A stretch of DNA of 64,000 bases, from positions 248,001-312,000 of the IMG/VR virus record IMGVR_UViG_3300043418_000072; one strand, written 5' to 3'. Shown piece by piece: positions 5,194 to 54,702 of this stretch. Every line of letters begins with the position of its first letter. Within the stretch, counting starts at the first letter, position 1. Under the pieces are notes generated by a model that worked only from the letters and a program-made list of their open reading frames with translations, was not told the origin of the DNA and did not search any database. A program made the position numbers and the translations under genes.

Positions 5194-5194
5194 T

Positions 5195-5689
5195 TTAAAT
5201 TTCTCCGCCGTCAATTACGCTGTTGTCTACATCCGGGCTTGGCTCTGTGATAGAATAGTATGCTGGCAATACATGTAGATCCAATGGGGCGCCATAGTTG
5301 TCATCTACATACGCAGGTTTTTCTGCATTGGTGTTTAAGTTTATTGTTTTGAATGTTAGCTTGTAAAAACGTTGTTCTAAGCTGCTAACAGTATTCTTGT
5401 CTATTGTAAAGGTACCTTGTCCCAGCGACACATTAGAGAATGTAACCGCATAACTGTTGACTGTTACTTGATTTGTTGGGTCCTGTATATCAGCCTGGAC
5501 TGCATAGCCTGCAATGTTCGCAGCTTTCTGGTCCTGGTTCTTTACTAAAACTTGGATTGGGTTGTCTATACCCTGATAGACTTTAATAGGGCGACTGTAC
5601 ACAGGTCTGTTCCTTGTTGTGAAGATGGCTGGGTCCATTATTTGAACCGTCACCGTGTTATCATATAAATATATTTTGGTAGTCTGCAT
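5195..5689 (-). CDS. Hypothetical (probable structural) protein
   Basis: 164-aa ORF preceded by CTAAATA and directly upstream of the fibre gene. Confidence 0.6.
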   Translation of the reverse strand: MQTTKIYLYDNTVTVQIMDPAIFTTRNRPVYSRPIKVYQGIDNPIQVLVKNQDQKAANIAGYAVQADIQDPTNQVTVNSYAVTFSNVSLGQGTFTIDKNTVSSLEQRFYKLTFKTINLNTNAEKPAYVDDNYGAPLDLHVLPAYYSITEPSPDVDNSVIDGGEI

Positions 5690-31664: not shown

Positions 31665-32120
31665 TTATTCTTCAATTTGTGTAACTGTTATGCCCGAACT
31701 CCTTAGGAATTGGACTCCTGCATCATCGCGATAGTTTGCACCATAAAATACACGACGAATGCCTGACTGAAAAATGAGCTTGGCACAGTGGATACAAGGA
31801 CTGTGAGTAACAAATAAGTCAGCCCCGTTGCCAACGTTAGGAGACTTCGCCAGTTTTGCAATAGCGTTTGATTCAGCATGTAATACCTCAGGTCGTGTTA
31901 CTAATCTAGTTGTATCTTCTTCAATGGCATAGGTTTGTTTGTTAACAACCTTGGGATGTTCTTCACAGTTGTTATCCCATCCCGCCGGCATGCCATTGTA
32001 TCCGTAAATAACCACATCGTCTTTGACAATAACTGCCCCTACCTTGAGCCTACGTGCATGACTTAGTTCAGCTGCACGATGTGCCCAGTCCATATATAGT
32101 TGTTGATATTTTGTTTTCAT
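31665..32120 (-). CDS. dCMP deaminase
   Basis: GYNG, HAESNAI, PCIHC. Confidence 0.9.
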   Translation of the reverse strand: MKTKYQQLYMDWAHRAAELSHARRLKVGAVIVKDDVVIYGYNGMPAGWDNNCEEHPKVVNKQTYAIEEDTTRLVTRPEVLHAESNAIAKLAKSPNVGNGADLFVTHSPCIHCAKLIFQSGIRRVFYGANYRDDAGVQFLRSSGITVTQIEE

Positions 32121-32155
32121 AAATGGCAAACCCCGCACAAGGCGGGGTAATGTTA

Positions 32156-33434: not shown

Positions 33435-34336
33435 TGGAGGACTGAGAATACATCTCTCCCAACAACACCTCGGACATTATTACGATCCTTGCGAGACCGC
33501 TTTCTTCCGACTTCCACTAAACCCTACTTGCATAGTAGTCTAGTCTGCTGTCAGCATCGCCGTTTTTAAAGACAGGCAGTAGTCTTGTCGCCATATGCTA
33601 TTCTACGCTTTCTATCCCGTTGACCTTTAGAGCCATTCACCACCGCTAAGTAGCTACGAAACTTCCTGCATAAACAGATTTCACCTTGCGAGTTACGTCT
33701 GACTTAGTTAGCTTGCGCCCTAAGTATTAGATGCTTTTCACATATGACCGAGTCAGTCTTTGCGTTTTGTAATGATAGCGGGAATTGAACCCGCCGCATT
33801 CTGTTTAAGAGACAGACGTTCTACCAATGAACTATATCAACCTACTGCGATGTGCTGACTCAGTTGCTGCATACTCTTTTGGAATACACAATACAACACA
33901 CCACGTACCTTTTGCCTTGCGAGCTACTCAGTCGTCTTTTGCGACCAATGTTCGTATTACTACGTCCACCAACCACTAAAACTGCATACGAGCTCTTAGG
34001 TGCAACCCTTCGAACCAATACACTACCCTTTCTCATACCAATTAACAAAGTTGGTTTCGCATAGAAGTCAGCACCACCTGTTACTTTCCATCTACTCAAG
34101 TTCCCCTTGATGCAATCTCAGGCTTGTAAGCAAACGTTCTTCCCTATGCACTTTGCGTCACTGTTACAACCACCCGTCGCTGAGTGATCGCTCCCTCACA
34201 GGAGTGAGCAGGCTTGTCTAAACGAACTATTGCTAGCGGAGTTATGTAGGCATACCTCCTTTGGCTGTGTCACCACAGTTATTCTTCGCATCAAGCTGGG
34301 CGAACCATACTCTTTGCAGGACATTAAACTGCCCCA
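33435..34336 (-). ncRNA. Probable GOLLD large ncRNA with embedded tRNA
   Basis: ~900 nt without a credible ORF inside a phage tRNA island; several GCAA-capped hairpins; 3' TGTATTCTCAG end recalled from GOLLD; internal tRNA. Confidence 0.7.
33770..33841 (-). tRNA. tRNA-Lys(CTT) embedded in GOLLD, no CCA
   Basis: Normal D, anticodon and T arms; weak acceptor terminus; no encoded CCA. Confidence 0.7.
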
Positions 34337-34338
34337 AA

Positions 34339-34451
34339 TTCTTATACAACTGCACACTCACAGGATTCGAACCTGCGACCCGGGCAATAGCCCGAGCTAT
34401 GATCCAACCATATCAGCGTGGCCTACGCCTTTATGTGCATGTGTATAAGAA
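34339..34451 (-). ncRNA. tRNA mimic on long stem (anticodon loop replaced by tetraloop)
   Basis: D arm TATG/CATA, CGGGC-TATT-GCCCG, T arm GCAGG-TTCGAAT-CCTGT, terminal stem TTCTTATAC/GTATAAGAA. Confidence 0.55.
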
Positions 34452-35030: not shown

Positions 35031-36206
35031 TTACTTATCATCTAAGCTGTTATTATAAACAAATTTGACTTGCTTGTCAACTATGTGTTTATCCATAATA
35101 GCTTCAAAATCTTTTGGGTCTTGTGCTTTTGGGGCACAGTAACCGCATATACATCTTGTTCTAGCACATTGTATAACAGGCATGGCTTTGTTGTCAATGT
35201 TTTTCTGCACTTGTTCTAGTATAAGATTACCATTTGACAAATTACCAATTGGACCAACTGTGCCGTTAAAGCGCATACGGCAATCCTTGTTTGTGTACAC
35301 ATCGCCATTGATCTGTTTAATGTACAAGAAGTACCAATTAACACTACAACTCCATCCCATGAAATCTGCATGTGGCACAAAGGCTGTTGGGTGTTGTAAG
35401 TCTTGGTTAGTGCATAGCTTTCGACCACCACAACAACCACGACCTACCTTACCCATGCCAACTGTGTCTGTTGACACTGCATCTAATGCCTTTGTTAGCG
35501 CATCTCTACTCTTAGCAGGGGTACGCGACTTGTAGTAATCTTGAAAGTAAATAAACTGTTCTTTGTTATATTGCCACTGTGGTGTAGGAGTGTCGTTTGC
35601 TTTAACTACATAGTCAACACTGTGTGTCTTGCAAAACTCGATAGCTTGTTGGCTAATATCCCACAAAACAGGATCGTTGTGCATCACAAACACCACCTTT
35701 TGGCGCCTGCCGATGGCCTTATTATAAAGTATGTTGTCTAGTACTTGCTGTCTCTGTTTAGGCAATGCACTGCTGTGAAAACTAACTGTAAACTCATCAA
35801 TTAAGTTTGCAACCTTTTCCCAAAGATTCTTGCCAGCCACTGCATTACTTGTGCATGTAACAGTTAATGGCCATTCGTATGTGTGTCTTGCACGAACCTG
35901 TTCAAGGATCTCAACAATGTCTGGATGAAAGATGCTTTCGCCGCCGTAGACATTAAGAACAACCATGCGCTGCCATTTAGGCTTTAGCTGCATGTACTTG
36001 TCTGCATAAGCAAACATGAAGTCAATGGTCTTTAAGCATTCGTCTTTAGGAGGATGCGCTGTGCTATTGTCGTGGCCACCATACTCAATGCCAGTTGAGC
36101 AGTAGTCGCAATCCAAATTGCACTTCATTGTCAATTCCCAGTCCAACAAAAATGTGGGACGGTTAACTGGATCGATTGCAGGCTCAATTGAGATAATTTT
36201 ATTCAT
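35031..36206 (-). CDS. Radical SAM enzyme with Cys-rich C-terminal domain
   Basis: CNLDCDYC, GGE, C-terminal CARTRCICGYC. Confidence 0.9.
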   Translation of the reverse strand: MNKIISIEPAIDPVNRPTFLLDWELTMKCNLDCDYCSTGIEYGGHDNSTAHPPKDECLKTIDFMFAYADKYMQLKPKWQRMVVLNVYGGESIFHPDIVEILEQVRARHTYEWPLTVTCTSNAVAGKNLWEKVANLIDEFTVSFHSSALPKQRQQVLDNILYNKAIGRRQKVVFVMHNDPVLWDISQQAIEFCKTHSVDYVVKANDTPTPQWQYNKEQFIYFQDYYKSRTPAKSRDALTKALDAVSTDTVGMGKVGRGCCGGRKLCTNQDLQHPTAFVPHADFMGWSCSVNWYFLYIKQINGDVYTNKDCRMRFNGTVGPIGNLSNGNLILEQVQKNIDNKAMPVIQCARTRCICGYCAPKAQDPKDFEAIMDKHIVDKQVKFVYNNSLDDK

Positions 36207-41587: not shown

Positions 41588-42412
41588 TAGGAATTTCCGC
41601 TGCTCAACAGTATGCAATGACAGATACTGAATTATAAACTTTTGCACTTCAATATTAGTAGTTATACCCAGCTGATCAAACAACACACGGCCTTGAGTTT
41701 TTATTAAGTCTTGTAGTTTAACCACTATGTCCATTTCGGGAATAACGTCTACCACTTTCTTATACACAAGATCTCCGTTATAGATTACACCAGGAGGGCG
41801 GTAATCCTCATTATCAAATTTTCCAATATCCAACACTTCCCACATACTGTGCTCAGTTATACACTTGTCTTGTATTGCTTGCGGGAGTGAATAAAAATCA
41901 TCGGCCTTTGTGATCAAGGGCCAATTGGCTTGTTTAATGTTGTTGTACCATATAAGCACTTGTTCTTCACGATACTCGGGTGTTTGCCAATTTGGGCCGT
42001 GGCCGTTTAGCTGCTGACCTGGTTGGAACCAATATGCACGTTTGGTTTTTGTTAAATGCCACTGTGTTGCTAGGTCTGTGTATAACAAGATTTTCTTTCC
42101 CGGATACTTGGCAAGTATGTTATCCTGCGGTCCAGGTTTTTGCGTTATCGGTATTGGGTTGCAGAGAAAAAATACTTTACTAACATCAAAACTAGTTGCC
42201 CGTGTGCCACTATTATTAGGCCATATTTCGTTGTCTTTCCACGCCGAAACATTTTGTATATTCCATTGCGTGGACTTTGTTTTGTGTACGTTGATTGTTC
42301 CGTTTTCGAAGCAACACTTATATTGGCCGCTGAGTAGCAACAGGTACAAACAAAAGAATCCGCCACTACCTCCAAAATAACAAATAGTTACATCAGCTGG
42401 CTTCTGCGTCAT
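41573..42412 (-). CDS. Hypothetical protein (sulfotransferase-like N-terminus)
   Basis: ICYFGGSGGF; WYNNIKQANWP motif. Confidence 0.55.
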   Translation of the reverse strand: MTQKPADVTICYFGGSGGFFCLYLLLLSGQYKCCFENGTINVHKTKSTQWNIQNVSAWKDNEIWPNNSGTRATSFDVSKVFFLCNPIPITQKPGPQDNILAKYPGKKILLYTDLATQWHLTKTKRAYWFQPGQQLNGHGPNWQTPEYREEQVLIWYNNIKQANWPLITKADDFYSLPQAIQDKCITEHSMWEVLDIGKFDNEDYRPPGVIYNGDLVYKKVVDVIPEMDIVVKLQDLIKTQGRVLFDQLGITTNIEVQKFIIQYLSLHTVEQRKFLLGKL

Positions 42413-43305
42413 CGGGCAACCCCAGTTAACTCTGATACAATAGTTTGTACTGTCTTAATTGAACTAATGTAATCAATTGCTTTGCCCGCAAATACATGCC
42501 CAGCAGTCGGACTCTTGATTCCCAGTTCTAGTCCCATTGTGTGATTACCATCTACGTCAGGCTCTGAAGAAAATACCAAAGCATTTTGATGAGCTTCGCC
42601 AATATTCTTTACTTGATCAAATGACGATTCGATCATTTTCAGTTTGGTTTCAGTTGAAATAGATGATTCTTCTGATACTGCAAATATTGTTCCCAACCCA
42701 ACTGCACATGCTCCTGCATCCAAGCAGTCTTGTATATCTTGTGCCGACGTTACGCCGCCCGATGCGATAATATTTAGATTGCTGTGGGTCGATTTTAGTT
42801 GCTTGATTCTATCCACTAGACTAATTGACACGTCTGCAACACGGGACGCAGCATCTGGTCCCTTTATATCAATTGCATCAATGTAATTAACTAAGTCCCC
42901 AATAGGGCGTGTGCTCAATACTTTGTAGATTATCTTAATTTTATATTTTCTAAAAAGTTTAATGATATTTGTTAAACGAATGTTTGTTAAGTCTACATCA
43001 TCAAACAATTCCAAGTAATTTGGATGGTATTTTAGAATAGCTTCAACCAGCGTTGTATCTTTTAATAAAAAATCCGATCGCAGTGCAAGAATAAAATCAC
43101 GAGACCCAGATTGCTCAGTGAATTCTTTCATCTCCGACACAATCTTTGTTACGTCAAGAGTCAATCGAGACTCAATATAATTGTGTACTACCAGGCTTGG
43201 CAGACAGCCTGCGTTGTGAACCGCGAGAGCCAACTTAACGTCGGACACTCTATTCATTGGCGCACAAATAATAGGATGTGTACAAGATAAAAAATTGTTT
43301 TGCAT
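42409..43305 (-). CDS. Nitronate monooxygenase/FabK-like FMN oxidoreductase
   Basis: PIICAPMNRVS, IIASGGV, GACAVGLGTIFAVSEES. Confidence 0.8.
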   Translation of the reverse strand: MQNNFLSCTHPIICAPMNRVSDVKLALAVHNAGCLPSLVVHNYIESRLTLDVTKIVSEMKEFTEQSGSRDFILALRSDFLLKDTTLVEAILKYHPNYLELFDDVDLTNIRLTNIIKLFRKYKIKIIYKVLSTRPIGDLVNYIDAIDIKGPDAASRVADVSISLVDRIKQLKSTHSNLNIIASGGVTSAQDIQDCLDAGACAVGLGTIFAVSEESSISTETKLKMIESSFDQVKNIGEAHQNALVFSSEPDVDGNHTMGLELGIKSPTAGHVFAGKAIDYISSIKTVQTIVSELTGVAR

Positions 43306-43400: not shown

Positions 43401-44609
43401 TTATTTTGTTTGTATAGAGAATACGTCTGTAAACGATTCGCCCCTAATAACATCATACTTCTTTGTATAGTCAAAGAATGCAGATGGCATATTTGGCGTT
43501 AATGTTGATAACGCTTGTTTCACATTTAGTAGCTCAGTAACCAATACTACATAATTTGGTGCAGTTAGTATTTCAACTGCTTTGTTAATTTGCTCAATTG
43601 CCCGGCCCCGCAGTTGATTAGGCAAGTTGTTAAAGTTCATGCCTGGCGGAGAAGTTACGTTATAGCACTTCACGCCAATGGTGTTGTTTTCGTTATATAG
43701 CCGCATCAGGAACGTTGCTGTTTCTGCAAAATCCATTAAACTATATGCAGATATTGCTGTTGTAACTTCCATCTTAAACGGCGATTGAAGTTGGTTAAGT
43801 CTAAGTACGTTACTTTCAACTTTTGGCCAATCTGTTCCGCTGCGAATATATTCTGCCGATTTACCCACTGCGTCAATGCTCATTACCATCTGCACTGTTT
43901 TAAATTTACTAAGACGGTCAACAAACAATGGGTTATACACACTGCAATTGGTGTATAGCTCTAGGTTAATTTCTTTGTTGAATCCGTTATCTATTAGATA
44001 ATCAAGGTAGTCGTAATATTCTTTTATTAAGAATGGTTCCCCACCCGTTAAGCATACTTTCCATACTGAGGCCAAGAAGGCAGGGTCCTTAAGACCCTCA
44101 ATAGAATTGCTTTCAATTTTTGTAATAGGTATCACACTGTACTCAATGTGGCTACCTTCTTTATCTGGTTTAATGTTGTGCTGAATCTTTTCTGCTGCAA
44201 AGCTAGAGCTAGATGTTTCATCGCACATTCTGCATTTCATGTTACACAGATTACTAAATCTAAGTTCAATGCGGCCCGGTACTGTCGGTGTGTCGGCTGT
44301 AAATTTATTTGCAAACCATTGATCTTCGTACTCGGGTTCTGGGCCTACATTATAGTAATTCCAAATTGCGCCGCGTGTGCTTTTTAGCCCCATGTCTTCT
44401 TTTGTCTTGCAGCCGCCACATGCAGTTGGGGCAGTGCCACTCAGCATATCTGTCTTCATCTGCTTGAGCCAATCACTGTTGATATACTCAGCGGGTGTCA
44501 TGCCAGACTCTAAGTTCTTGATGTAATGACACGGACTAGGAGAGTTGGCGTGATAGTACATCATTGTCCACGGTGCTGGGCAAAAGAACTTCTCAGAAAA
44601 CTTTGCCAT
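43401..44609 (-). CDS. Radical SAM enzyme with N-terminal twitch-like domain
   Basis: FCPAPW..PC..CGGC, CNMKCRMC, TGGEP. Confidence 0.9.
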   Translation of the reverse strand: MAKFSEKFFCPAPWTMMYYHANSPSPCHYIKNLESGMTPAEYINSDWLKQMKTDMLSGTAPTACGGCKTKEDMGLKSTRGAIWNYYNVGPEPEYEDQWFANKFTADTPTVPGRIELRFSNLCNMKCRMCDETSSSSFAAEKIQHNIKPDKEGSHIEYSVIPITKIESNSIEGLKDPAFLASVWKVCLTGGEPFLIKEYYDYLDYLIDNGFNKEINLELYTNCSVYNPLFVDRLSKFKTVQMVMSIDAVGKSAEYIRSGTDWPKVESNVLRLNQLQSPFKMEVTTAISAYSLMDFAETATFLMRLYNENNTIGVKCYNVTSPPGMNFNNLPNQLRGRAIEQINKAVEILTAPNYVVLVTELLNVKQALSTLTPNMPSAFFDYTKKYDVIRGESFTDVFSIQTK

Positions 44610-46378: not shown

Positions 46379-46703
46379 ATTCATTTTTCTCTTTTAATCG
46401 CATAGCTTCTAATCTTGCTTTCAAGAATAGTTCAACTACATCTTTATTTAACTTAGTAAATCCTGTCTTGATTAGAAAGAACAATTCGTCTTTTTCTGAC
46501 TCAAGCCATACCACGTGAGCATCACCTGTATTGCCCACTGCCCCAAGTCCTTCGGGGTTGCTGAATCTCTGTGCCGCGTTACAAATGAACGCAAACTTTA
46601 CCCCAAAGTCCCTTGATAGTACTTCTGGACCAGTGGCCTCACCTTGGGCAATCCGGTACACATAGTTGTACTCGTACGGAACGTCAACGTAGACTTTGTG
46701 CAT
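46362..46703 (-). CDS. Hypothetical protein
   Basis: 113-aa coupled ORF. Confidence 0.55.
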   Translation of the reverse strand: MHKVYVDVPYEYNYVYRIAQGEATGPEVLSRDFGVKFAFICNAAQRFSNPEGLGAVGNTGDAHVVWLESEKDELFFLIKTGFTKLNKDVVELFLKARLEAMRLKEKNEYETCN

Positions 46704-47206
46704 TAGATATCACCTTCGTGGCTTGGGGGTAAAATGATACCACCTGCGCTGTATTGGTATGGTTGACCATTGATTGTTGGCTCTTCGTTCTCATCGTATG
46801 TCCATCCCAGATGCTTCATCATGCGATGCTTGACTAGCAAGTTAGGAGCACGAAATGCTTCAGTGTCATCAAACCCAAGCATGACCCCAACTTCACAAAC
46901 TGCACCACTGCGGCAAACACCGGCATGGCAGTGAACAATCACGTTCATGCGATTCTCTAGTGCATGTTGCAACAAACGAACTAGCTCCGCAGCTTGCTCG
47001 TGACTGCAACGCATTTCTTCTTCAAGAACGTAGTCCTTTTCCTCTACATCGAGGAACTCAAATTGATGAACTTCTCTAAACTTGTAAAGGGGGGTAGGAC
47101 ACTCGCTCCCGCAGTCAACAATTTGAATCAACATAGCGTTATCACCGGGGTTTATGTGAAACCCTTTAGTGACATCGCTACGTGCTACGTTTTGGATCCA
47201 GGGCAT
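46703..47206 (-). CDS. Cys-based tyrosine/dual-specificity phosphatase
   Basis: VHCHAGVCRS (CX5R); start MPWIQN. Confidence 0.85.
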   Translation of the reverse strand: MPWIQNVARSDVTKGFHINPGDNAMLIQIVDCGSECPTPLYKFREVHQFEFLDVEEKDYVLEEEMRCSHEQAAELVRLLQHALENRMNVIVHCHAGVCRSGAVCEVGVMLGFDDTEAFRAPNLLVKHRMMKHLGWTYDENEEPTINGQPYQYSAGGIILPPSHEGDI

Positions 47207-47231
47207 TTTGTTTCCTTGTGTTAAATACAGT

Positions 47232-47408
47232 ATGAGCAAACCCAATCCTGGATTCGATGAATTACTTAAACTCGGCAACGGAACTTATTCCAATGCTAAG
47301 AGCTTCTCTTGTGTTAAACATTTTACACGAGATTATCCTGAAAAGCAAGATTTGCCTTTTGTACAGGATATGAAATTCTGGCAGAGGATAGTGGAATCGA
47401 ACCACTAA
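47232..47408 (+). CDS. Possible small late protein (58 aa)
   Basis: TAAATA just upstream of the ATG; overlaps the tRNA remnant. Confidence 0.25.
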   Translation: MSKPNPGFDELLKLGNGTYSNAKSFSCVKHFTRDYPEKQDLPFVQDMKFWQRIVESNH

Positions 47409-49876: not shown

Positions 49877-49883
49877 TAAAACT

Positions 49884-49970
49884 TGGAGGATAGAAACAGA
49901 ATCGAACTGTTACCGCTTTCGCAGTAGATCGGTTTAGCAAACCAACTCGGCACCATGCACACTACTATCC
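49884..49970 (-). tRNA. tRNA-Ser(GCT), divergent (U73)
   Basis: Long variable arm, CCA. Confidence 0.7.
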
Positions 49971-49975
49971 ATAAC

Positions 49976-50051
49976 TGGCATCCTGTACGGGAATCGAACC
50001 CGTCTCTACAACTTGAAAGGCTGTTGATCTAAACCGATAATCTAACAGGAT
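49976..50051 (-). tRNA. tRNA-Glu(TTC)
   Basis: Loop CT-TTC-AA. Confidence 0.85.
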
Positions 50052-50058
50052 ATAAAAC

Positions 50059-50135
50059 TGGCGCCTCGTATCGGGCTCGAACCGACGGCCTCAACAGTGA
50101 CAGTGTTGCGCTCTAACCAACTGAGCTAACGAAGC
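50059..50135 (-). tRNA. tRNA-Asp(GTC)
   Basis: Canonical. Confidence 0.9.
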
Positions 50136-50142
50136 ATAAATT

Positions 50143-50460
50143 TCGAGGAGCATCATTCTTGAGGACTCTTACCCCACCCTTTTGCTCACGCTGTTGTTCA
50201 CTGCGATTGCCACCATGCTCCCTCGCTGGCGGGTGTTTACTTTGTGGCTCTTGCTTTCCACTTGATTCTGTTAGTTCAAGGAATACACGGCGTTAAACTA
50301 ACCCACAAACTAGATGTGGTGATTAACTTCTGTCCTTGTTGCAGTCTTTCCGCTAACAATACTTTTCCTTACCCTACTGGACCGACTTTGCTTATCGTTC
50401 GTCACTTTCGTGAAGCCCGGGAAGTCTCTCCCGGGTCGGTTTCCGTCTACTCTAGTACTC
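50143..50460 (-). ncRNA. Block of unidentified structured RNA(s)
   Basis: CCCGGGA/TCCCGGG, TCAC-GAAA-GTGA, CCGAC/GTCGG and GAGCAT/ATGCTC helices; no credible ORF. Confidence 0.4.
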
Positions 50461-50478
50461 ACTATTGTCTTAGTGTTT

Positions 50479-50564
50479 TGGTGGGGATAGTTAGATTCGA
50501 ACCAACTCATCCAGTGGAAACAGATTTACAGTCTGCCGCGCCTCTCCAACTGCGCCGTATCCCC
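50479..50564 (-). tRNA. tRNA-Tyr(GTA)
   Basis: Long variable arm, CCA. Confidence 0.9.
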
Positions 50565-50576
50565 ATTATTTCTTTA

Positions 50577-50756
50577 TGCTGTTAAGGCTGATATCTAATA
50601 AACCCTACTAGGAATCGAACCTAGGCCCCCGACGGATTATGCCGGTGTGCGTCCACTACACTATAGAGACTCCCTCCTCTTTCGCTCGGCAAAGCTACAC
50701 GAATTGAGGTTAGATTTCAGACTGCTTTCAGATTGCCGTCATCAGCCTTAACAACA
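50577..50756 (-). ncRNA. tRNA-like domain on long closing stem (Y-RNA-like architecture)
   Basis: ~16-bp terminal duplex TGTTAAGGCTGAT; D arm, CTAGG-TTCGATT-CCTAG; no CCA. Confidence 0.55.
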
Positions 50757-50762
50757 CAAACT

Positions 50763-50832
50763 TGGCGCCCCTAACAGGAATCGAACCTGTCTACGTTCGG
50801 CTTCAAATCCGACTCGCAACTCAGTCCGGGGC
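50763..50832 (-). tRNA. D-armless tRNA-like RNA with 8-nt anticodon loop
   Basis: GCCCC/GGGGC-G-CCA, T arm, TCGG-ATTTGAAG-CCGA. Confidence 0.55.
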
Positions 50833-50842
50833 ATAAACTTAT

Positions 50843-50987
50843 GTACATCAGCGGGATTCGAACCCGCACACATCACCCGAACATACCGCATTGTTAGCGG
50901 CTTACACATCCTAGGCCACTGGCCTTTACTGTCGATGTCCTACTTAGTGTTATGGGTAATGCTCTCCCAATTGATAGTATGACGCAC
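50843..50987 (-). ncRNA. tRNA-like RNA with ~75-nt anticodon-arm insertion
   Basis: 8-bp acceptor, D arm, CATTACCC/GGGTGATG stem, T arm; no CCA. Confidence 0.55.
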
Positions 50988-51061
50988 GAAATAGAAACAC
51001 ATTGCTAGTTTCGCCTTGAGCCGACTTTAAAATCAGATGCGGTTTAAGCAATGTGAAAACT

Positions 51062-51201
51062 TGGTGTAGTAATTGGGACTTGAACCCAACTAGTTATCTG
51101 TTTTTACAAACGGGTGATATCACTTCCCATCGCCATATGCCCCTCGGGTTTGCAATCCTGCTACGCACACAGTCAAATAACCTGTCAACCTAACTTACCA
51201 C
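51062..51201 (-). ncRNA. 140-nt tmRNA-like RNA (Ala-identity tRNA-like domain)
   Basis: GTGGTAA/TTACTAC-A-CCA with G3-U70, stemless D loop ending GAC, 9-bp P2-like helix, T arm. Confidence 0.5.
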
Positions 51202-51208
51202 AAAAACT

Positions 51209-51283
51209 TGGAAGAGCTACGGGGAATCGAACCCCGCTTGCCTGGATGAAAACCAGATGTCCTAACCGATAGACGATAGCTCC
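51209..51283 (-). tRNA. tRNA-Glu(TTC), divergent
   Basis: Loop TT-TTC-AT, U73. Confidence 0.8.
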
Positions 51284-51284
51284 A

Positions 51285-51367
51285 CTATATGTAAACACAA
51301 TACTCATCCGCTTTACGCTAATATCACTTTAGGCGATTTGATTGTTCGGCATTGTGTTTGCATATAG
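51285..51367 (-). ncRNA. Stem-closed small RNA
   Basis: Terminal duplex matches 33348-33434. Confidence 0.45.
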
Positions 51368-51404
51368 AGCCCTGTAACTTGTACAGGGATATATGACAGT
51401 ATCT

Positions 51405-51414
51405 TTTTAAAGAC
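51405..51414 (-). promoter_or_regulatory. boxA-like element followed by a CCTGTA hairpin
   Basis: GTCTTTAAAA downstream of tandem promoters. Confidence 0.4.
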
Positions 51415-51467
51415 TGTTAGCATTACAGTACGATCACTGCGCTGCGTTGTTTGTTTAACATGTATGT

Positions 51468-51496
51468 ATTATAGTACCAATTTCTTTATTGGACAA
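51468..51496 (-). promoter_or_regulatory. sigma70-type promoter
   Basis: TTGTCC-17-TATAAT. Confidence 0.6.
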
Positions 51497-51562
51497 CTGT
51501 TATTTTCTAACTGTTGTTTTTATGCTACTCTACACTTTATGCTAATTTCTTAACATGTGTGT

Positions 51563-51591
51563 ATTATAGCACCCATTTCATTAAGTGTCAA
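51563..51591 (-). promoter_or_regulatory. Consensus sigma70 promoter
   Basis: TTGACA-17-TATAAT; spacer start CTTAATGAAA shared with the 34878 promoter. Confidence 0.8.
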
Positions 51592-51594
51592 ATT

Positions 51595-51671
51595 TGGTAC
51601 CCCTGGCTGGATTCGAACCTGCAACCAAAAGATTTTAAGTCTGTCCGCACTACCAATTAGCGTACAGGGGC
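51595..51671 (-). tRNA. tRNA-Leu(TAA), short variable loop
   Basis: 77 nt, loop CT-TAA-AA, A73. Confidence 0.8.
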
Positions 51672-51674
51672 ATA

Positions 51675-51751
51675 TGGTACCTTCGGGCGGATTCGAACCC
51701 CCAACCAACAGTTTCTAAAACTATCCGCACTACCAATTAGCGTACGAAGGC
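51675..51751 (-). tRNA. tRNA-Leu(TAG), short variable loop
   Basis: 77 nt, loop TT-TAG-AA. Confidence 0.8.
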
Positions 51752-51759
51752 ATTGTATG

Positions 51760-52016
51760 TGGCTTCGTTAGCAGGACTCGAACCTGCGACCCGGGGCTTA
51801 AATCGCGTATGCTGGGTGCCCCGTGAGTTTCCAAAAGTTACCCTCACATCCCCTCAATGCCTTATCTCACTTTTCACACATTTCAACCTGTCCCGCACTT
51901 CCCGGGCTCACAGTGTTTGGTTTTAAAGCCTACGCGATTGTTATCTACTTTGTGCTACTAGATGTATTATCTCATCTACTCAATGCTGCTCTACCTTCTC
52001 TCTACTCTATAACGAA
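51760..52016 (-). ncRNA. 257-nt tRNA-like RNA with large internal domain
   Basis: TTCGTTA/TAACGAA-G-CCA, T arm, internal AATCGCGTA/TACGCGATT helix. Confidence 0.55.
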
Positions 52017-52023
52017 ATAAACT

Positions 52024-52100
52024 TGGTACCCCGTGTCTGATTCGAACAGACAGCCAACTCCTTTTGAGAGAATCCGCACTACCAATTAGCGTAACGGGGC
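52024..52100 (-). tRNA. tRNA-Leu(CAA), short variable loop
   Basis: 77 nt, loop CT-CAA-AA. Confidence 0.8.
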
Positions 52101-52110
52101 ATTTAAATTT

Positions 52111-52186
52111 TGGTGCAACCTCCAGGGATCGAACCTGGTTCAATGGCTCTTCAGACCACCGCTATGACCACATCAGCTAAAGTTGC
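52111..52186 (-). tRNA. tRNA-Phe(GAA), G37 variant
   Basis: Loop CT-GAA-GA. Confidence 0.85.
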
Positions 52187-52189
52187 ATT

Positions 52190-52264
52190 TGGTAGTTCCT
52201 AGTGGTGTCGAACCACCGACCTCTACAATGTCAATGTAGCGTTCTACCGCTGAACTAAGGAACT
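52190..52264 (-). tRNA. tRNA-Val(GAC)
   Basis: Cloverleaf with CCA. Confidence 0.9.
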
Positions 52265-52271
52265 ATAAAAC

Positions 52272-52345
52272 TGGCACGGGAACCGGGGCTCGAACCCGGA
52301 ACGACAGAGTCAAAGTCTGTTGTGTTACCATTACACCATCCCCGA
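52272..52345 (-). tRNA. tRNA-Gln(TTG)
   Basis: Loop CT-TTG-AC. Confidence 0.9.
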
Positions 52346-52353
52346 ACAAAAAT

Positions 52354-52432
52354 TGGACACTGTGGTGTAAGTTGCAGTACACATTACTAACTATTTGCAA
52401 GGCTACACATAGCGGCCCCGCTTAACACAGTG
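52354..52432 (-). tRNA. Highly atypical tRNA-like RNA, possibly Cys (GCA + U73)
   Basis: Perfect 7-bp acceptor CACTGTG/CACAGTG-U-CCA, non-canonical T loop, TTGCAAA in the central loop. Confidence 0.45.
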
Positions 52433-52440
52433 ATAAAAAT

Positions 52441-52612
52441 TGGAGTCTAGTGCTGTTGTGACACAGCAACATCCCTTGAGCGAGAGCGTAGGAACTAAAT
52501 CTACGGGTTTAACACCTCTTGGGTTGAACAGTCAGGACAATTACTTTGTAAGCGTACTAAACAGCGCCTGTTCAGAGCGCTCCCTTTGGGTTACTTTCAT
52601 TTCCAACTAGAC
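52441..52612 (-). ncRNA. 172-nt tRNA-like RNA (acceptor + CCA, large interior)
   Basis: GTCTAGT/ACTAGAC-U-CCA and a GCTGT/ACAGC arm in the T-arm position. Confidence 0.5.
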
Positions 52613-52617
52613 ATAAT

Positions 52618-52696
52618 TGGCTCCGAGTGTGGGAATCGAACCCACCTAACCACTGATTAACAGTCAGGTCCCTGCACCTTGCTTGGATTTCTCGGA
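52618..52696 (-). tRNA. tRNA-Asn(GTT), divergent
   Basis: Altered D arm, CCA. Confidence 0.8.
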
Positions 52697-52702
52697 ATAA
52701 CT

Positions 52703-52778
52703 TGGTGCCCCAGTCCGGAATCGAACCGACTTCTCCTGCTTACAAGACAGGACCTCATCCATTAAAGGTTTCAAGGGC
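52703..52778 (-). tRNA. tRNA-Thr(TGT), divergent
   Basis: Loop CT-TGT-AA, CCA. Confidence 0.8.
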
Positions 52779-52783
52779 ATATA

Positions 52784-52860
52784 TGGCATACCAGGAGAGA
52801 TTCGAACTCCCATCACGCAATTTTGGAGACTGCTGTTCTGCCAATTGGAACTACTGGTAT
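52784..52860 (-). tRNA. tRNA-Trp(CCA) with U11-A24
   Basis: D stem GTTC/GAAC; loop CT-CCA-AA. Confidence 0.9.
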
Positions 52861-52867
52861 ATAAACT

Positions 52868-52951
52868 TGGTGGATACTGTAGGAATCGAACCTACTCACT
52901 TTACGAACTGGGTTACAGCCAGCCACACCTCTCCAACTGTGTCGAGTATCC
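52868..52951 (-). tRNA. tRNA-Tyr(GTA)
   Basis: Loop CT-GTA-AC, long variable arm. Confidence 0.85.
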
Positions 52952-52959
52952 ATTAACTT

Positions 52960-53033
52960 TGGTACCTGGTACAAGAATCGAACTTGTGATAAAGGCTTAT
53001 CAAGCCTCCGTTATACCATTTAACTAACCAGGT
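52960..53033 (-). tRNA. tRNA-Ile(GAT)
   Basis: Cloverleaf with CCA. Confidence 0.9.
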
Positions 53034-53039
53034 AAAATT

Positions 53040-53128
53040 TGGCGGGGAGATAGTAGAATCGAACTCTAACCACTTTCGCAGTCCATCGGTTTTCAAGACC
53101 GTGACAGGCCCAGCCTGCATAACTCCCC
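53040..53128 (-). tRNA. tRNA-Ser(TGA), divergent
   Basis: Long variable arm, G73, bulged T stem. Confidence 0.75.
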
Positions 53129-53133
53129 GTGAT

Positions 53134-53207
53134 TGGTCTGGGTAGCTGGAATCGAACCAGCGCCTCGAGTATCCAAGACTCGTCGACTACCATTATCCTA
53201 TACCCAG
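53134..53207 (-). tRNA. tRNA-Pro(TGG), A37 variant
   Basis: Loop CT-TGG-AT. Confidence 0.85.
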
Positions 53208-53214
53208 ATTATTT

Positions 53215-53289
53215 TGGTGGAGGCCGGGGGTATCGAACCCCTCTAGACAATCTACGTGCAAGGCAGATCCGCAGCCCTCTGCTGCCCCC
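53215..53289 (-). tRNA. tRNA-Ala(TGC), atypical D arm
   Basis: G3-U70; D arm GCAG-AGGG-CTGC. Confidence 0.7.
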
Positions 53290-53296
53290 ATAAAAG

Positions 53297-53446
53297 GTTT
53301 TTGAGAGCCCAACTATCCTCCTGGGAGGACTCACTGGATTGTCTCGTATGGACGAGTTTATCAACCACTATAGCAGCCTGGCGTTATCATGTAGTAGACA
53401 CTACACTATGCTATGTGGGACTCAAGTCCTACGTCTATCTCAAAAC
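53297..53446 (-). ncRNA. Stem-closed structured RNA
   Basis: TTTTGAGA/TCTCAAAA closure with several internal hairpins. Confidence 0.35.
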
Positions 53447-53447
53447 T

Positions 53448-53522
53448 TGGTGGATGTAGCTAGATTCGAACTAGCGATAGTTACCGTATGAAGGTAGTGC
53501 ATTACCACTTTGCTATACATCC
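53448..53522 (-). tRNA. tRNA-Met(CAT), elongator-like
   Basis: Loop TT-CAT-AC, CCA. Confidence 0.8.
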
Positions 53523-53844
53523 AAATATATTCCTTAAGGTTTCCGGCGCTGGGCTCGGACATAGTATAGAATCAGAATCTATCTATCATCGTCATCCTTA
53601 AGGTATTCATAAACAAACTAGTGGGTCGCTGCCAAAAAATATGTTTCAAATATATTCTAGTCTTCTAGTTTGTTTGTGAATACCCTGTATTGCTACAGGA
53701 TATGTTAGGGTCGATACCCTAACCAGTTATTTGTACTCTGCTGTTACCGCCAGCATTTCATCCAACTGTCCGCCCGTTTAAAGATTATTATAGTGTTCTT
53801 TCAGGTCCTCGTTACCTGGGCATATAGCACTTATCTAACACTGT

Positions 53845-53997
53845 CTATGCGTGAAGTGAAAACTTTTTACGGCTTTCTAGTTCCTTCCTTGCACGTTCTA
53901 ACTTTTCTTGAATCAACGTATTACGTTGTTCTGTTGTTAGCGTATGCTCGGCAGTAAACTTTACTTCACGAATTCTTTTATTAAAGTCTACCTTCAA
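53845..53997 (-). CDS. Small basic protein (50 aa)
   Basis: AAGGA RBS, TTG start just after the terminator: MKVDFNKRIREVKF... Confidence 0.4.
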   Translation of the reverse strand: MKVDFNKRIREVKFTAEHTLTTEQRNTLIQEKLERARKELESRKKFSLHA

Positions 53998-54010
53998 AAA
54001 TTTCTTCCTT

Positions 54011-54045
54011 AAAACAAAAAACCCTAGGGTTTTTAATCCTAGGGT
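54011..54045 (-). terminator. Intrinsic terminator of putative attenuator
   Basis: ACCCTAGG/CCTAGGGT followed by TTTTTGTTTT. Confidence 0.75.
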
Positions 54046-54071
54046 CCTTTAAGTTTGTTAGCTACTACTTG

Positions 54072-54221
54072 TTAAGCGTAACCACTTCCCTCTAAGAACC
54101 CTAAACTAATCTCCGGTGCGCGATCATTCGTATTCAAACTAAACGACATCCCTGACCAATAGGCCACTGTGCCTAAGGTAGACTGTTGTTGTTTAAGTGA
54201 ATGAAGAATGTTTTGCATCAT
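54072..54221 (-). CDS. Putative leaderless leader peptide (49 aa)
   Basis: ATG 6 nt after the -10 box; contains the antiterminator strand 54094-54103. Confidence 0.6.
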   Translation of the reverse strand: MMQNILHSLKQQQSTLGTVAYWSGMSFSLNTNDRAPEISLGFLEGSGYA

Positions 54222-54227
54222 GTTAGT

Positions 54228-54256
54228 ATTGTATGTTTATTTACCTTTGTTGTCAA
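54228..54256 (-). promoter_or_regulatory. sigma70 promoter for the leader/tRNA operon
   Basis: TTGACA-17-TACAAT. Confidence 0.75.
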
Positions 54257-54331
54257 CCTCTTTAACAACATCTGGTAAATTTATTTATCTTTTTGTTTAA
54301 ACTTTCGTTTCTTTGTTTGTTACAAGCCTCA

Positions 54332-54360
54332 ATTGTATGACACTTGTCTTTCTGTGTCAA
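54332..54360 (-). promoter_or_regulatory. sigma70 promoter
   Basis: TTGACA-17-TACAAT. Confidence 0.65.
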
Positions 54361-54377
54361 CTACAACTTTTACCATT

Positions 54378-54470: not shown

Positions 54471-54499
54471 ATTATATATGCTTAACACAAGAGTGTCAA
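54471..54499 (-). promoter_or_regulatory. Consensus sigma70 promoter
   Basis: TTGACA-17-TATAAT. Confidence 0.75.
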
Positions 54500-54673: not shown

Positions 54674-54702
54674 ATTATAACTAATTGATCATTGCGTGTC
54701 AA
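54674..54702 (-). promoter_or_regulatory. Consensus sigma70 promoter
   Basis: TTGACA-17-TATAAT. Confidence 0.7.

What the first reader, a model, noticed from the sequence alone, without database searches (positions are those of the whole stretch)
50843..52612. tRNA scaffolds carrying large inserted domains
Seen: three RNAs keep tRNA termini but have an enlarged interior. 51760-52016 is 257 nt with CCA and G73. 52441-52612 is 172 nt with a perfect acceptor and U73-CCA. 50843-50987 is 145 nt with an insertion exactly at the anticodon loop. I see no group I or II intron cores, and two of the inserts are too short for them. Inference: tRNA ends let RNase P and 3' trimming release stable cargo RNAs, such as decoys, antitoxin mimics or guides. 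This may be an undescribed phage RNA class.
Basis: partly seen in the sequence, partly recalled or inferred. Interest (0 to 1): 0.68.

Follow-up and report, generated by a model that had tools for sequence, protein, structure and literature searches.

The report
tRNA-framed structured RNAs in phage array
A huge uncultivated phage carries, inside its tRNA operons, at least three conserved structured RNAs that keep tRNA-type ends around a large non-decoding interior; none matches a catalogued RNA family and their function is unknown.

Summary
All three RNAs lie on the minus strand at the stated coordinates, inside a 48-tRNA array of a 354-kb phage contig.

RNA a (51760-52016) has 42 distinct homologs. 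All sit in same-strand phage tRNA arrays and all encode CCA. Covariation supports all four cloverleaf stems, and the tRNA core nucleotides are invariant. A ~168-nt rod-like domain sits in the D loop. The anticodon loop is replaced by 20 nt, 12 of which can pair with the insert in an invariant pseudoknot, so a cannot decode.

RNA b (52441-52612, 15 homologs) has only a 7-bp acceptor stem plus a T-like hairpin around a conserved core. RNA c (50843-50987, 3 homologs) has an acceptor stem, a canonical T arm and a long, branched anticodon arm, with no encoded CCA.

No Rfam family matches, including group I and II introns. No insert-free alleles exist. They are not introns, pseudogenes or tmRNAs.

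The most likely reading is stable non-decoding RNAs cut out of σ70-driven tRNA precursors by the host tRNA-processing enzymes. This is inferred, not shown. T4 species 1 RNA (rnaC) has the same layout but no sequence similarity, so the idea is not wholly new. Function is unknown.

The parts
51760..52016 (-). RNA a, 257 nt: a complete tRNA core with a D-loop domain insert and an enlarged, pseudoknotted anticodon loop. It ends in G73-CCA.
   Evidence: Covariance-model match 304 bits with exact ends. 42 distinct homologs. Structure statistics exceed all 500 shuffles.
52010..52016 (-). a: acceptor stem, 5' strand (RNA positions 1-7). It pairs with window 51764-51770. G73 is 51763 and CCA is 51760-51762.
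   Evidence: 99.6% of cells paired; 4 of 7 pairs change on both sides. CCA present in 40 of 40 sequences.
51825..52007 (-). a: D arm. The D stem is 52004-52007 with 51825-51828. It encloses the ~168-nt insert (about 51833-52001), which forms a segmented rod.
   Evidence: D stem 100% paired, 4 of 4 pairs change on both sides. Rod stem at RNA 19-22/180-183 is 99% paired. Rod stems 31-35/167-171 and 41-44/158-161 covary at every pair. A14, R15 and the G19 equivalent are kept on either side of the insert.
51927..51939 (-). a: pseudoknot strand 1 (RNA 78-90), inside the invariant core of the insert.
   Evidence: Complementary over 12 bp to RNA 204-216. Identical in 40 of 40 aligned sequences. RNAalifold on 40 sequences selects this pairing.
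51801..51813 (-). a: pseudoknot strand 2 (RNA 204-216), inside the 20-nt loop that replaces the anticodon loop.
   Evidence: One compensatory change (U90-A204 to G-C) in the divergent copy L053.
51792..51823 (-). a: anticodon-type stem (RNA 194-199 with 220-225) closing a 20-nt loop.
   Evidence: 93% paired; 5 of 7 model pairs change on both sides.
51771..51787 (-). a: canonical T arm (5-bp stem, loop UUCGAGU).
   Evidence: 100% paired, 4 of 5 pairs change on both sides. G53, U54, U55, C56, R57, A58 and C61 invariant.
52441..52612 (-). RNA b, 172 nt. 7-bp acceptor stem (52606-52612 with 52445-52451), U73 (52444), CCA (52441-52443), T-like hairpin (52452-52467, 6-nt loop NUCRYA) and a highly conserved core (about 52470-52543).
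   Evidence: 15 distinct homologs. 17 of 37 consensus pairs covary, including the acceptor and all 5 pairs of the 3' hairpin. Four-sequence consensus.
50843..50987 (-). RNA c, 145 nt. 8-bp terminal stem (50980-50987 with 50843-50850), weak D arm, canonical T arm (50851-50867) and an anticodon arm lengthened to 9+4 bp that ends in two hairpins (50870-50962). No CCA encoded.
   Evidence: 10 of 45 pairs show compensatory changes among 3 sequences. MFE z = -2.0. The L040 copy keeps the terminal stem, with one bulge.
51062..51164 (-). RNA d, about 103 nt: a fourth tRNA-framed RNA. It has a covarying T arm, A73-CCA, a terminal stem with a conserved mismatch and a conserved non-tRNA interior.
   Evidence: 7 homologs; the T stem covaries at 4 pairs.
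51563..51591 (-). Perfect σ70-type promoter (12 of 12, with an extended -10 TG) upstream of the operon section that holds d and c. A second 10-of-12 copy lies at 51468-51496.
   Evidence: The direct repeat of the promoter block was seen.
54228..54256 (-). Promoter-like site (11 of 12) upstream of the section that holds b and a. Perfect sites also lie at 54674-54702 and 54471-54499.
   Evidence: No terminator-like site on the minus strand between it and a.

Best explanation
The three elements, plus a fourth (d), are genes for stable, non-decoding structured RNAs. They belong to unrelated families and are embedded in the phage's σ70-transcribed tRNA operons.

Each keeps the part of a tRNA that the host processing enzymes read: an acceptor stem stacked on a T or T-like hairpin, usually with CCA. 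The inferred pathway is as follows. RNase P cuts the 5' end. An endonuclease cuts in the short A/U-rich spacer. Exonucleases then trim back to the CCA or to the stem. This releases the RNAs from the same precursors as the neighbouring tRNAs, with protected ends.

The function lies in the interior, not in decoding. RNA a is the extreme case. It is a full L-shaped tRNA core: four stems, U8, A14, the R15:Y48 pair, G18/G19 equivalents and a T loop. A ~168-nt rod-and-junction domain grows out of the variable pocket of its D loop. Its anticodon loop is replaced by 20 nt, 12 of which pair with an invariant stretch of that domain. This masks the anticodon end.

My preferred mechanism, held at about 0.3, is that these RNAs are tRNA mimics. 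They would occupy a tRNA-binding partner, such as a host tRNA-cleaving defence nuclease or a tRNA enzyme, without being usable in translation.

Shown here: the structures, their conservation, their array context and the absence of an intron core. Inferred: processing, stability and function.
For: Existence and structure:
- For a, 91.9% of cells are paired against 36-43% when partners are slid by 1-3 columns. 37 pairs change on both sides. 0 of 500 shuffles reach any measure.
- tRNA core nucleotides and CCA are invariant in 40 sequences. The 15:48 pair is GC in 38 and AU in 1.
- Further covarying rod stems were found.
- The 12-bp long-range pairing is identical in 40 of 40 sequences.
- b: 17 of 37 pairs covary in 14 sequences.
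- c: 10 of 45 pairs are compensatory in 3 sequences.

Context:
- a lies in a same-strand tRNA array in 39 of 39 loci.
- A canonical tRNA of 12 different identities ends 6-10 nt upstream in 25 of those loci.
- Perfect σ70 promoters lie on the same strand.
- There is no ORF of 85 aa or more on the minus (gene) strand across 49.9-54.7 kb; the longest ORF there on either strand is 113 aa.
- The spacer word CCAAGTTT is enriched at tRNA 3' ends.

Not introns or known families:
- No Rfam match at E<=10.
- ARAGORN calls a as an intron-bearing tRNA only at a 70% threshold, and with a non-pairing anticodon stem.
- No insert-free allele exists in about 100 loci.
- The insert core is invariant while the stems vary.

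Precedent:
- T4 rnaC has a T arm plus terminal stem around a 139-nt body in the T4 tRNA cluster.
Against: - There are no expression, end-mapping or RNase P data.
- Single-sequence folding energies of a (z = +0.3) and b (z = -1.3) do not stand out from shuffles.
- The pseudoknot in a is invariant, so covariation supports it only through one change in one divergent copy. It could form between molecules rather than within one.
- The 3' hairpin loop of b has 6 nt, not the 7-nt T loop, and some b copies lack CCA.
- c lacks CCA, and only three copies are known.
- Nothing points to a specific partner. No RNA-specific protein gene (Ro/TROVE, RtcB, ligase) was found among the 40 ORFs scanned.
Confidence: 0.72

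Rival explanations
1. They are ordinary tRNA genes interrupted by introns, either self-splicing or protein-spliced. The mature products would be normal decoding tRNAs.
For: a keeps a full tRNA core. Removing RNA positions 16-184 would leave a normal-length D loop. The insert in c sits at the anticodon arm. ARAGORN at a 70% threshold calls a as tRNA-Lys with a 180-nt intron.
Against: - No group I or II match at E<=10.
- a would need two separate excisions, from the D loop and the anticodon loop, and these two parts pair with each other.
- Neither a nor c would end up with a 7-nt U33 anticodon loop.
- The ARAGORN intron model gives a non-pairing anticodon stem.
- The inserts (about 70 nt in c, 168 nt in a) are below known group I sizes (my own knowledge).
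- No insert-free allele exists.
- The insert core is more conserved than the 'exons'.
- b has no tRNA body at all.
Confidence: 0.05
2. They are decayed tRNA pseudogenes, or chance tRNA-like ends around junk sequence.
For: Standard tRNA finders reject them. The folding energy of a is no better than that of shuffles.
Against: There are 42, 15 and 3 distinct homologs from marine, freshwater and other metagenomes, with compensatory changes in every stem and invariant cores.
Confidence: 0.02
3. They are aminoacylated special-purpose tRNA relatives. Examples would be a tmRNA-like ribosome-rescue RNA, or an amino-acid donor for a non-ribosomal reaction, with the anticodon end replaced because it is not needed.
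For: CCA and the discriminator base are conserved in a (G73 in 38 of 40), as is the U1-A72 pair. The full L-shaped core is kept. Several radical SAM and methyltransferase genes lie in and beside the array.
Against: - No G3-U70 pair and no conserved tag reading frame. A frame GCA UAC GCG AUU UAA exists in the window copy, but the stop is lost in L004 and others (my reading).
- ARAGORN finds no tmRNA at default settings.
- Rfam tmRNA gives only local T-arm matches of 9-16 bits.
- Synthetases for tRNAs with U1-A72 and G73 (Gln, Asn) need the anticodon (my own knowledge).
Confidence: 0.08
4. They are cis-acting parts of the tRNA precursor rather than stable RNAs with a function of their own. They might act as processing timers, transcription or decay regulators, or spacers protecting neighbouring tRNAs.
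For: They always occur inside arrays. Other ORF-free conserved blocks without tRNA ends lie in the same array, at 50136-50478, 53290-53447 and 53523-54377.
Against: The neighbouring tRNAs of a differ from phage to phage (12 identities), and a is absent from the closest relative L003 with no other change. So a is a free-standing module. Encoded CCA and a complete tRNA core are not needed for a spacer.
Confidence: 0.1

Closest known systems
Phage T4 species 1 RNA (rnaC, 139 nt) and species 2 RNA (rnaD, 119 nt)
   Same: They are encoded in the phage tRNA cluster on the tRNA strand, immediately after a tRNA. rnaC ends in a canonical T arm plus a terminal stem around an enlarged interior, the same layout as c and d. 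Their function was still called unknown in 2022 (PMC9697503).
   Different: nhmmer finds no sequence similarity at E<=10. rnaC has no full cloverleaf, no D-loop domain and no pseudoknotted anticodon loop like a. rnaD has no T arm.
tmRNA (RF00023)
   Same: tRNA-like acceptor and T arm with CCA, enclosing a large pseudoknotted interior of similar overall size (about 260-400 nt).
   Different: a, b and c have no G3-U70 pair and no conserved tag ORF. a keeps D and anticodon stems, which tmRNA lacks. Rfam gives only 9-16-bit local matches in a and c, and ARAGORN makes no tmRNA call at default settings.
GOLLD and ROOL RNAs of phage tRNA islands
   Same: Large, ornate RNAs of unknown function encoded next to or around phage tRNAs (PMC12286853). 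A GOLLD with an embedded tRNA-Lys lies in this same array.
   Different: The topology is the reverse. GOLLD carries a tRNA in a linker, whereas a is a tRNA carrying the ornate domain. There is no sequence or model match. a, b and c are much smaller.
Bacterial Y RNA-like YrlA (RF02553)
   Same: A non-decoding RNA with a tRNA-mimicking module (T arm, D arm, acceptor-like stem) (PMC4201824).
   Different: In YrlA the RNA termini form the Ro-binding stem, not the acceptor stem. The match here is 18 bits against a threshold of 69, and it spans a neighbouring tRNA. No TROVE/Ro gene was seen among the ORFs scanned.
tRNA genes with group I introns (e.g. tRNA-Leu UAA)
   Same: A tRNA frame with a structured insert of a few hundred nucleotides.
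   Different: Those introns sit in the anticodon loop, have the group I core and leave a normal tRNA. Here there is no core, the D loop is the insertion site in a, and no normal anticodon loop can be restored.
Engineered 'tRNA scaffold' for recombinant RNA expression (my own knowledge; not checked in the paper library)
   Same: Cargo replaces the anticodon stem-loop while the acceptor, T and D arms ensure processing and stability. This is the design of c.
   Different: It is man-made. Natural counterparts have not been reported as a class, as far as my searches went.

Membership tests
Canonical tRNA (RF00005) | Four-stem cloverleaf with conserved tertiary nucleotides | tested here: met
   Met for a only. 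All four stems covary. U8, A14, R15:Y48, the T loop and CCA are invariant. c has acceptor, T and anticodon stems but a weak D arm. b has only the acceptor and a T-like hairpin.
Canonical tRNA (RF00005) | 7-nt anticodon loop with U33 and a readable anticodon; score at or above the Rfam threshold | tested here: not met
   a has a 20-nt loop, c has a branched arm and b has none. There is no RF00005 match to a, b or c even at E<=10. ARAGORN makes no call at default settings.
Group I or II intron in a tRNA gene | Intron catalytic core detectable by the family model | tested here: not met
   No Intron_gpI or group II match at E<=10 over 50000-53600.
Group I or II intron in a tRNA gene | Excision restores a normal tRNA; intron-free alleles occur | tested here: not met
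   Two separate enlargements in a pair with each other. All 53 acceptor-matched copies are 250-269 nt and none is tRNA-sized.
tmRNA (RF00023) | G3-U70 alanine identity pair and a tag ORF ending in a stop codon | tested here: not met
   Position 3:70 is C-G (U-A in L022) in a and C-G in b. No conserved reading frame (my reading of the alignment). Rfam score 9-16 bits against a threshold of 47.
T4 rnaC-type stable RNAs of phage tRNA clusters | Encoded within a phage tRNA cluster on the tRNA strand; T arm plus terminal stem around an enlarged interior | tested here: met
T4 rnaC-type stable RNAs of phage tRNA clusters | Sequence homology to rnaC or rnaD | tested here: not met
   nhmmer of a to k against T4 69000-74000 gave nothing at E<=10. 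blastn of a and b against 50,697 phage records gave no match.
T4 rnaC-type stable RNAs of phage tRNA clusters | Accumulates as a discrete stable RNA processed from the tRNA precursor | not testable with these tools
   Needs RNA data from an infected host or a metatranscriptome.
YrlA / Y RNA | Ro60-binding terminal helix and a linked Ro (TROVE) gene | tested here: not met
   18.4 bits against a threshold of 69. No TROVE domain in the 40 ORFs scanned.

The most novel reading that the evidence does not exclude
RNA a would define a new class: a complete tRNA body that carries its own anticodon-capping domain. The invariant 12-bp pairing between the D-loop domain and the anticodon loop might form within one molecule or reciprocally between two molecules, giving a symmetric dimer. 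Either way it would make a tRNA-shaped particle built to be bound by tRNA-recognising proteins, but not decoded or cut in the anticodon loop. It would act as a phage counter-defence decoy against tRNA-cleaving immunity, or the invariant core would be a catalytic or ligand-binding site. Together with b, c, d and the ORF-free blocks, huge-phage tRNA arrays would then be operons for a whole suite of undescribed functional RNAs.
Probability: 0.2. Interest if true: 0.85.

Novelty: new variant of a known kind. Interest (0 to 1): 0.64.

Why it matters
Why phages carry tRNA arrays is an open question. Current thinking links them to codon supply and to escape from tRNA-cleaving defences (PMC10264068, PMC13056530).

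This window shows that such arrays in huge aquatic phages also hold several conserved, highly structured RNAs that are not tRNAs but use tRNA ends. One of them (a) is found in dozens of metagenome contigs. It has a 60-nt core that is invariant between copies whose stems have diverged.

These are concrete, well-delimited candidates for structure determination and for tests of tRNA mimicry in phage-host conflict. They also offer a route to the 50-year-old puzzle of T4 species 1 and 2 RNAs. On the practical side, they are missing from Rfam and are skipped by tRNA finders.

Tried and rejected
- **Group I/II intron, ribozyme, riboswitch or any other Rfam family.** Nothing at E<=10.
- **ARAGORN intron mode.** No call at default settings. 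At 70-80% thresholds the calls are spurious, including a 'tRNA-Thr' that joins the 5' half of d to the 3' half of c.
- **tmRNA.** No G3-U70 pair and no conserved tag.
- **First consensus structure from 3 sequences.** It paired RNA 80-94 of a with 160-173. On 42 sequences these helices show no double changes and many mismatches, so I replaced them with the invariant pseudoknot.
- **Guide hypothesis.** The reverse complement of the invariant single-stranded stretch of a matches only itself in the window. One 2-mismatch site is within chance.
- **Homologs in cultured phages or cellular genomes.** None for a or b in GenBank phages. The 6 pattern matches in GTDB species genomes and 8 of the 45 metagenome matches are high-GC chance hits that the model rejects.
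- **Homology to T4 rnaC/rnaD.** None.
- **More c homologs.** A scan of viral contigs with a 20-mer found only the already known copies.
- **Linked RNA-binding protein.** Pfam scans of 40 ORFs found no Ro, RtcB, ligase or nuclease candidate next to the elements.
- **Literature.** Seven searches found no description of these families.
Full report
**Setting**

The window is part of a 354-kb viral contig, IMGVR_UViG_3300043418_000072. It encodes a T4-type terminase, a UvsW-like helicase and a UvsX/RecA-like protein. The helicase is about 50% identical to those of the Atu_ph07, PA5oct and Phosso group of jumbo phages.

From 32156 to 54664 the minus strand carries 48 ARAGORN tRNAs and a GOLLD RNA. 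Between 49.9 and 54.7 kb the longest ORF on either strand is 113 aa, and none on the minus (gene) strand reaches 85 aa. The minus strand has perfect 12-of-12 σ70 promoters at 54702, 54499, 51591 and 49421, and 11-of-12 sites at 54360 and 54256. The three reported elements lie on this strand, between ordinary tRNAs.

**Checking the observation**

| RNA | Window | Length | Ends |
|---|---|---|---|
| a | 51760-52016 | 257 nt | 7-bp acceptor stem, canonical T arm, G73, CCA |
| b | 52441-52612 | 172 nt | perfect 7-bp terminal stem, U73, CCA |
| c | 50843-50987 | 145 nt | 8-bp terminal stem, canonical T arm, no CCA |

In c the enlarged interior sits at the anticodon arm. Neither ARAGORN at default settings nor the Rfam tRNA model calls any of them. 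A permissive Rfam scan (E<=10) of 50000-53600 finds no intron, ribozyme or other family. The only matches in a and c are local tmRNA-model matches to the T arm, plus a sub-threshold YrlA match that spans a neighbouring tRNA.

**RNA a is a large, real family**

- *Homologs found.* Protein-anchored loci gave two relatives of 88-90% identity. Exact-word scans with the conserved core then gave more viral contigs and 45 metagenome stretches. A covariance model recovers 50 copies, of which 42 are distinct. Eight metagenome matches and all six matches in GTDB species genomes are high-GC chance hits that the model rejects. No GenBank phage has it.
- *Overall statistics.* On the 42 sequences the model structure is 91.9% paired, against 36-43% when partners are slid by 1-3 columns. 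37 pairs change on both sides, and no shuffle out of 500 reaches any measure.
- *Helix by helix.* The acceptor (99.6% paired), D stem (100%, all four pairs with double changes), anticodon-type stem (93%), T stem (100%), an inner stem and a CCCG/CGGG hairpin (100%) are all supported.
- *The insert.* Two further long-range stems, at RNA 31-35/167-171 and 41-44/158-161, covary at every pair. The insert is therefore a segmented rod growing out of the D stem and ending in a junction.
- *tRNA core.* U8, A14, R15, the G19 equivalent, the T-loop nucleotides (G53, U54, U55, C56, R57, A58) together with C61, and CCA are invariant or nearly so. The 15:48 pair is G-C in 38 sequences and A-U in one. The insert sits between D-loop positions 15/16 and 18, in the pocket that points to solvent in a tRNA (established tRNA structure, my own knowledge).

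**The anticodon end of a**

The anticodon-type stem closes a 20-nt loop. Twelve of its nucleotides (RNA 204-216) are complementary to RNA 78-90, inside the most conserved part of the insert. All 12 pairs are identical in 40 of 40 aligned sequences.

RNAalifold on the 40 sequences prefers this pairing. The alternative local helices of my first three-sequence model have no double changes and many mismatches. One divergent copy (L053) changes U90-A204 to G-C.

The pairing crosses the D stem, so it is a pseudoknot if it forms within one molecule. It could equally form between two molecules. Either way, no 7-nt anticodon loop exists and a cannot decode.

The core of the insert (about 60 nt) and this loop are invariant even in copies whose acceptor, T and anticodon stems have changed completely, such as L022 and L061. 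Selection therefore acts on the insert.

**a is an independent array module**

- In all 39 loci examined, a sits in a same-strand tRNA array.
- In 25 of them a canonical tRNA ends 6-10 nt upstream. That tRNA has 12 different identities across the loci.
- The closest relative of the window (L003, flanking protein 99% identical) lacks a. The two flanking tRNA-Leu genes are simply adjacent there.
- No tRNA-sized copy with the same acceptor ends exists in about 100 loci. All 53 acceptor-matched copies are 250-269 nt.

**RNA b**

There are 15 distinct homologs. The 7-bp terminal stem and the adjacent 5-bp hairpin covary strongly, and 17 of 37 consensus pairs do so overall.

The hairpin loop has 6 nt, with the pattern N-U-C-R-Y-A. 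It resembles a T loop but is one nucleotide short. Most copies encode CCA, but some do not.

Between these ends lies a ~75-nt core that is almost invariant, preceded by variable hairpins that covary. b therefore has only the 'minihelix' part of a tRNA. No GenBank phage has it.

**RNA c**

Three copies are known: the window, L003 and L040. Among them 10 of 45 pairs show compensatory changes. These include pairs in the T stem, the 9-bp 'anticodon' stem and both distal hairpins. L040 keeps the terminal stem, with one bulge. The folding energy is modestly better than that of shuffles (z = -2.0). CCA is not encoded.

**A fourth example**

Element d (about 51062-51164), between a and c, has a covarying T arm, A73-CCA and a conserved non-tRNA interior in seven loci.

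**How they most likely work**

*Shown.* Four unrelated, conserved structured RNAs keep the acceptor and T(-like) stack. They sit at tRNA spacing in σ70-driven tRNA operons.

*Inferred from established tRNA maturation in bacteria.* RNase P recognises the acceptor/T stack and the elbow. Endonuclease cuts in the A/U-rich spacers separate the units. Exonucleases then stop at CCA or at the stem. The spacer word CCAAGTTT recurs at 3' ends in this array: 7 of 10 window matches, against 3.0 expected. The RNAs would then accumulate like tRNAs, with their function in the interior.

For a, the intact L-shaped core with a masked anticodon end suggests a tRNA mimic that is bound but not used. A decoy or inhibitor of a tRNA-binding protein fits current ideas on phage tRNAs and tRNA-cleaving defences (PMC10264068, PMC13056530). 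Nothing here tests that idea.

**Rivals**

- *Intron-bearing tRNAs.* Contradicted by the missing core, the two interacting enlargements, the lack of a restorable anticodon loop, the absence of intron-free alleles and the higher conservation of the insert.
- *Pseudogenes.* Excluded by the covariation.
- *tmRNA-like or charged special-purpose RNAs.* They lack the G3-U70 pair and a conserved tag. Charging as such is untested.
- *A purely cis-acting role in the precursor.* This is hard to reconcile with the changing neighbours of a and with its presence or absence as a unit.

**Comparison with known RNAs**

T4 species 1 RNA (rnaC) lies directly after tRNA-Arg in the T4 tRNA cluster. It folds with a canonical T arm and a terminal stem around a 139-nt body, which is the same design as c and d. 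Its function is still called unknown (PMC9697503). There is no sequence similarity to any element here.

GOLLD and ROOL are likewise tied to phage tRNA islands (PMC12286853). One GOLLD with an embedded tRNA lies in this array, with the reverse topology to a.

The general idea, stable RNAs with tRNA-like ends in phage tRNA clusters, is therefore old. Families a, b and c are not catalogued, and I know of no precedent for the architecture of a.

**Verdict**

I rate the novelty as a new variant of a known kind and the interest at about 0.64. The elements are real, widespread, structurally unusual and experimentally tractable, but their function is unknown and the concept has a T4 precedent.

Noticed in passing
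window 33439-33904 (-): GOLLD RNA (196 bits, Rfam threshold 150) with a tRNA-Lys(CUU) gene (33769-33841) embedded in it, in the same tRNA array.
   Followed up: partly
window 51062-51164 (-): Fourth tRNA-framed RNA (d, about 103 nt). It has a covarying T arm, A73-CCA, a terminal stem with a conserved mismatch and a conserved interior. Homologs in 7 loci.
   Followed up: partly
window 53523-54377 (-): An 855-nt block whose longest minus-strand ORF is 50 aa (54 aa on the plus strand). It is 98% identical in L003 and 77-79% in L004-L007, which is as conserved as the flanking proteins. It contains two 11-of-12 promoter-like sites and has no Rfam match at E<=10. It may be another large non-coding RNA.
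   Followed up: partly
window 50136-50478 (-): A 343-nt block with no T arm between tRNA-Tyr and tRNA-Asp; its longest minus-strand ORF is 66 aa, and a 113-aa ORF overlaps it on the opposite strand. It is conserved in at least 8 other loci by nhmmer, down to E about 1e-20.
   Followed up: no
window 53290-53447 (-): A 158-nt conserved element closed by an 8-bp terminal stem, just upstream of a tRNA-Ala. In many other phages (L004, L005, L036, L045) it follows RNA a directly.
   Followed up: partly
window 53215-53289, 53041-53129, 52618-52697, 50763-50835 (-): tRNA genes or tRNA-like sequences that ARAGORN misses at default settings. The first reads as a tRNA-Ala(UGC) with G3-U70. The second is a long-arm Ser(UGA)/Sec-like tRNA (Rfam tRNA-Sec 42.9 bits, below the threshold of 47). 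The third is a tRNA-Asn(GUU) (31.7 bits). The fourth is a 70-nt tRNA-like sequence with a poor D arm.
   Followed up: partly
window 51595-51751 and 52024-52100 (-): Three 77-nt tRNAs with leucine anticodons (UAA, UAG, CAA) share a D arm and have no long variable arm. Two 84-nt tRNA-Leu genes elsewhere in the array do have one. Their aminoacylation identity is unclear.
   Followed up: no
window 51284-51594 (-): An AT-rich gap holding a direct repeat of a promoter block: TTGACA-17-TATAAT with an extended -10 TG at 51591-51563, and a 10-of-12 copy at 51496-51468. The array is therefore split into several σ70 transcription units.
   Followed up: partly
window 49879-53450 (-): The word CCAAGTTT (CCA end plus an A/U-rich spacer) occurs 7 times at tRNA 3' ends in this stretch. 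There are 10 in the whole window, against 3.0 expected. It may be an endonuclease processing site.
   Followed up: no
window 31665-32138, 35031-36206, 42409-43305, 43401-44609, 46703-47278 (-): Protein genes interspersed in the tRNA array: a cytidine/dCMP-type deaminase next to the first tRNA, two radical SAM proteins, an NMO/FMN-oxidoreductase-like protein with a faint Dus match, and a dual-specificity phosphatase. They are possible RNA-modifying enzymes, but this was not tested.
   Followed up: no
window 34350-34439 (-): ARAGORN calls an 88-nt 'tRNA-Pro(UGG)' here. On folding, the anticodon-type stem is long and GC-rich and closes a 4-nt loop. The 168-nt stretch folds far better than shuffles (z = -4.5).
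   Followed up: no
window 1636-5214 (-): A 1192-aa protein with an N-terminal Mtd_N (major tropism determinant) domain. This hints at a target protein of a diversity-generating retroelement.
   Followed up: no
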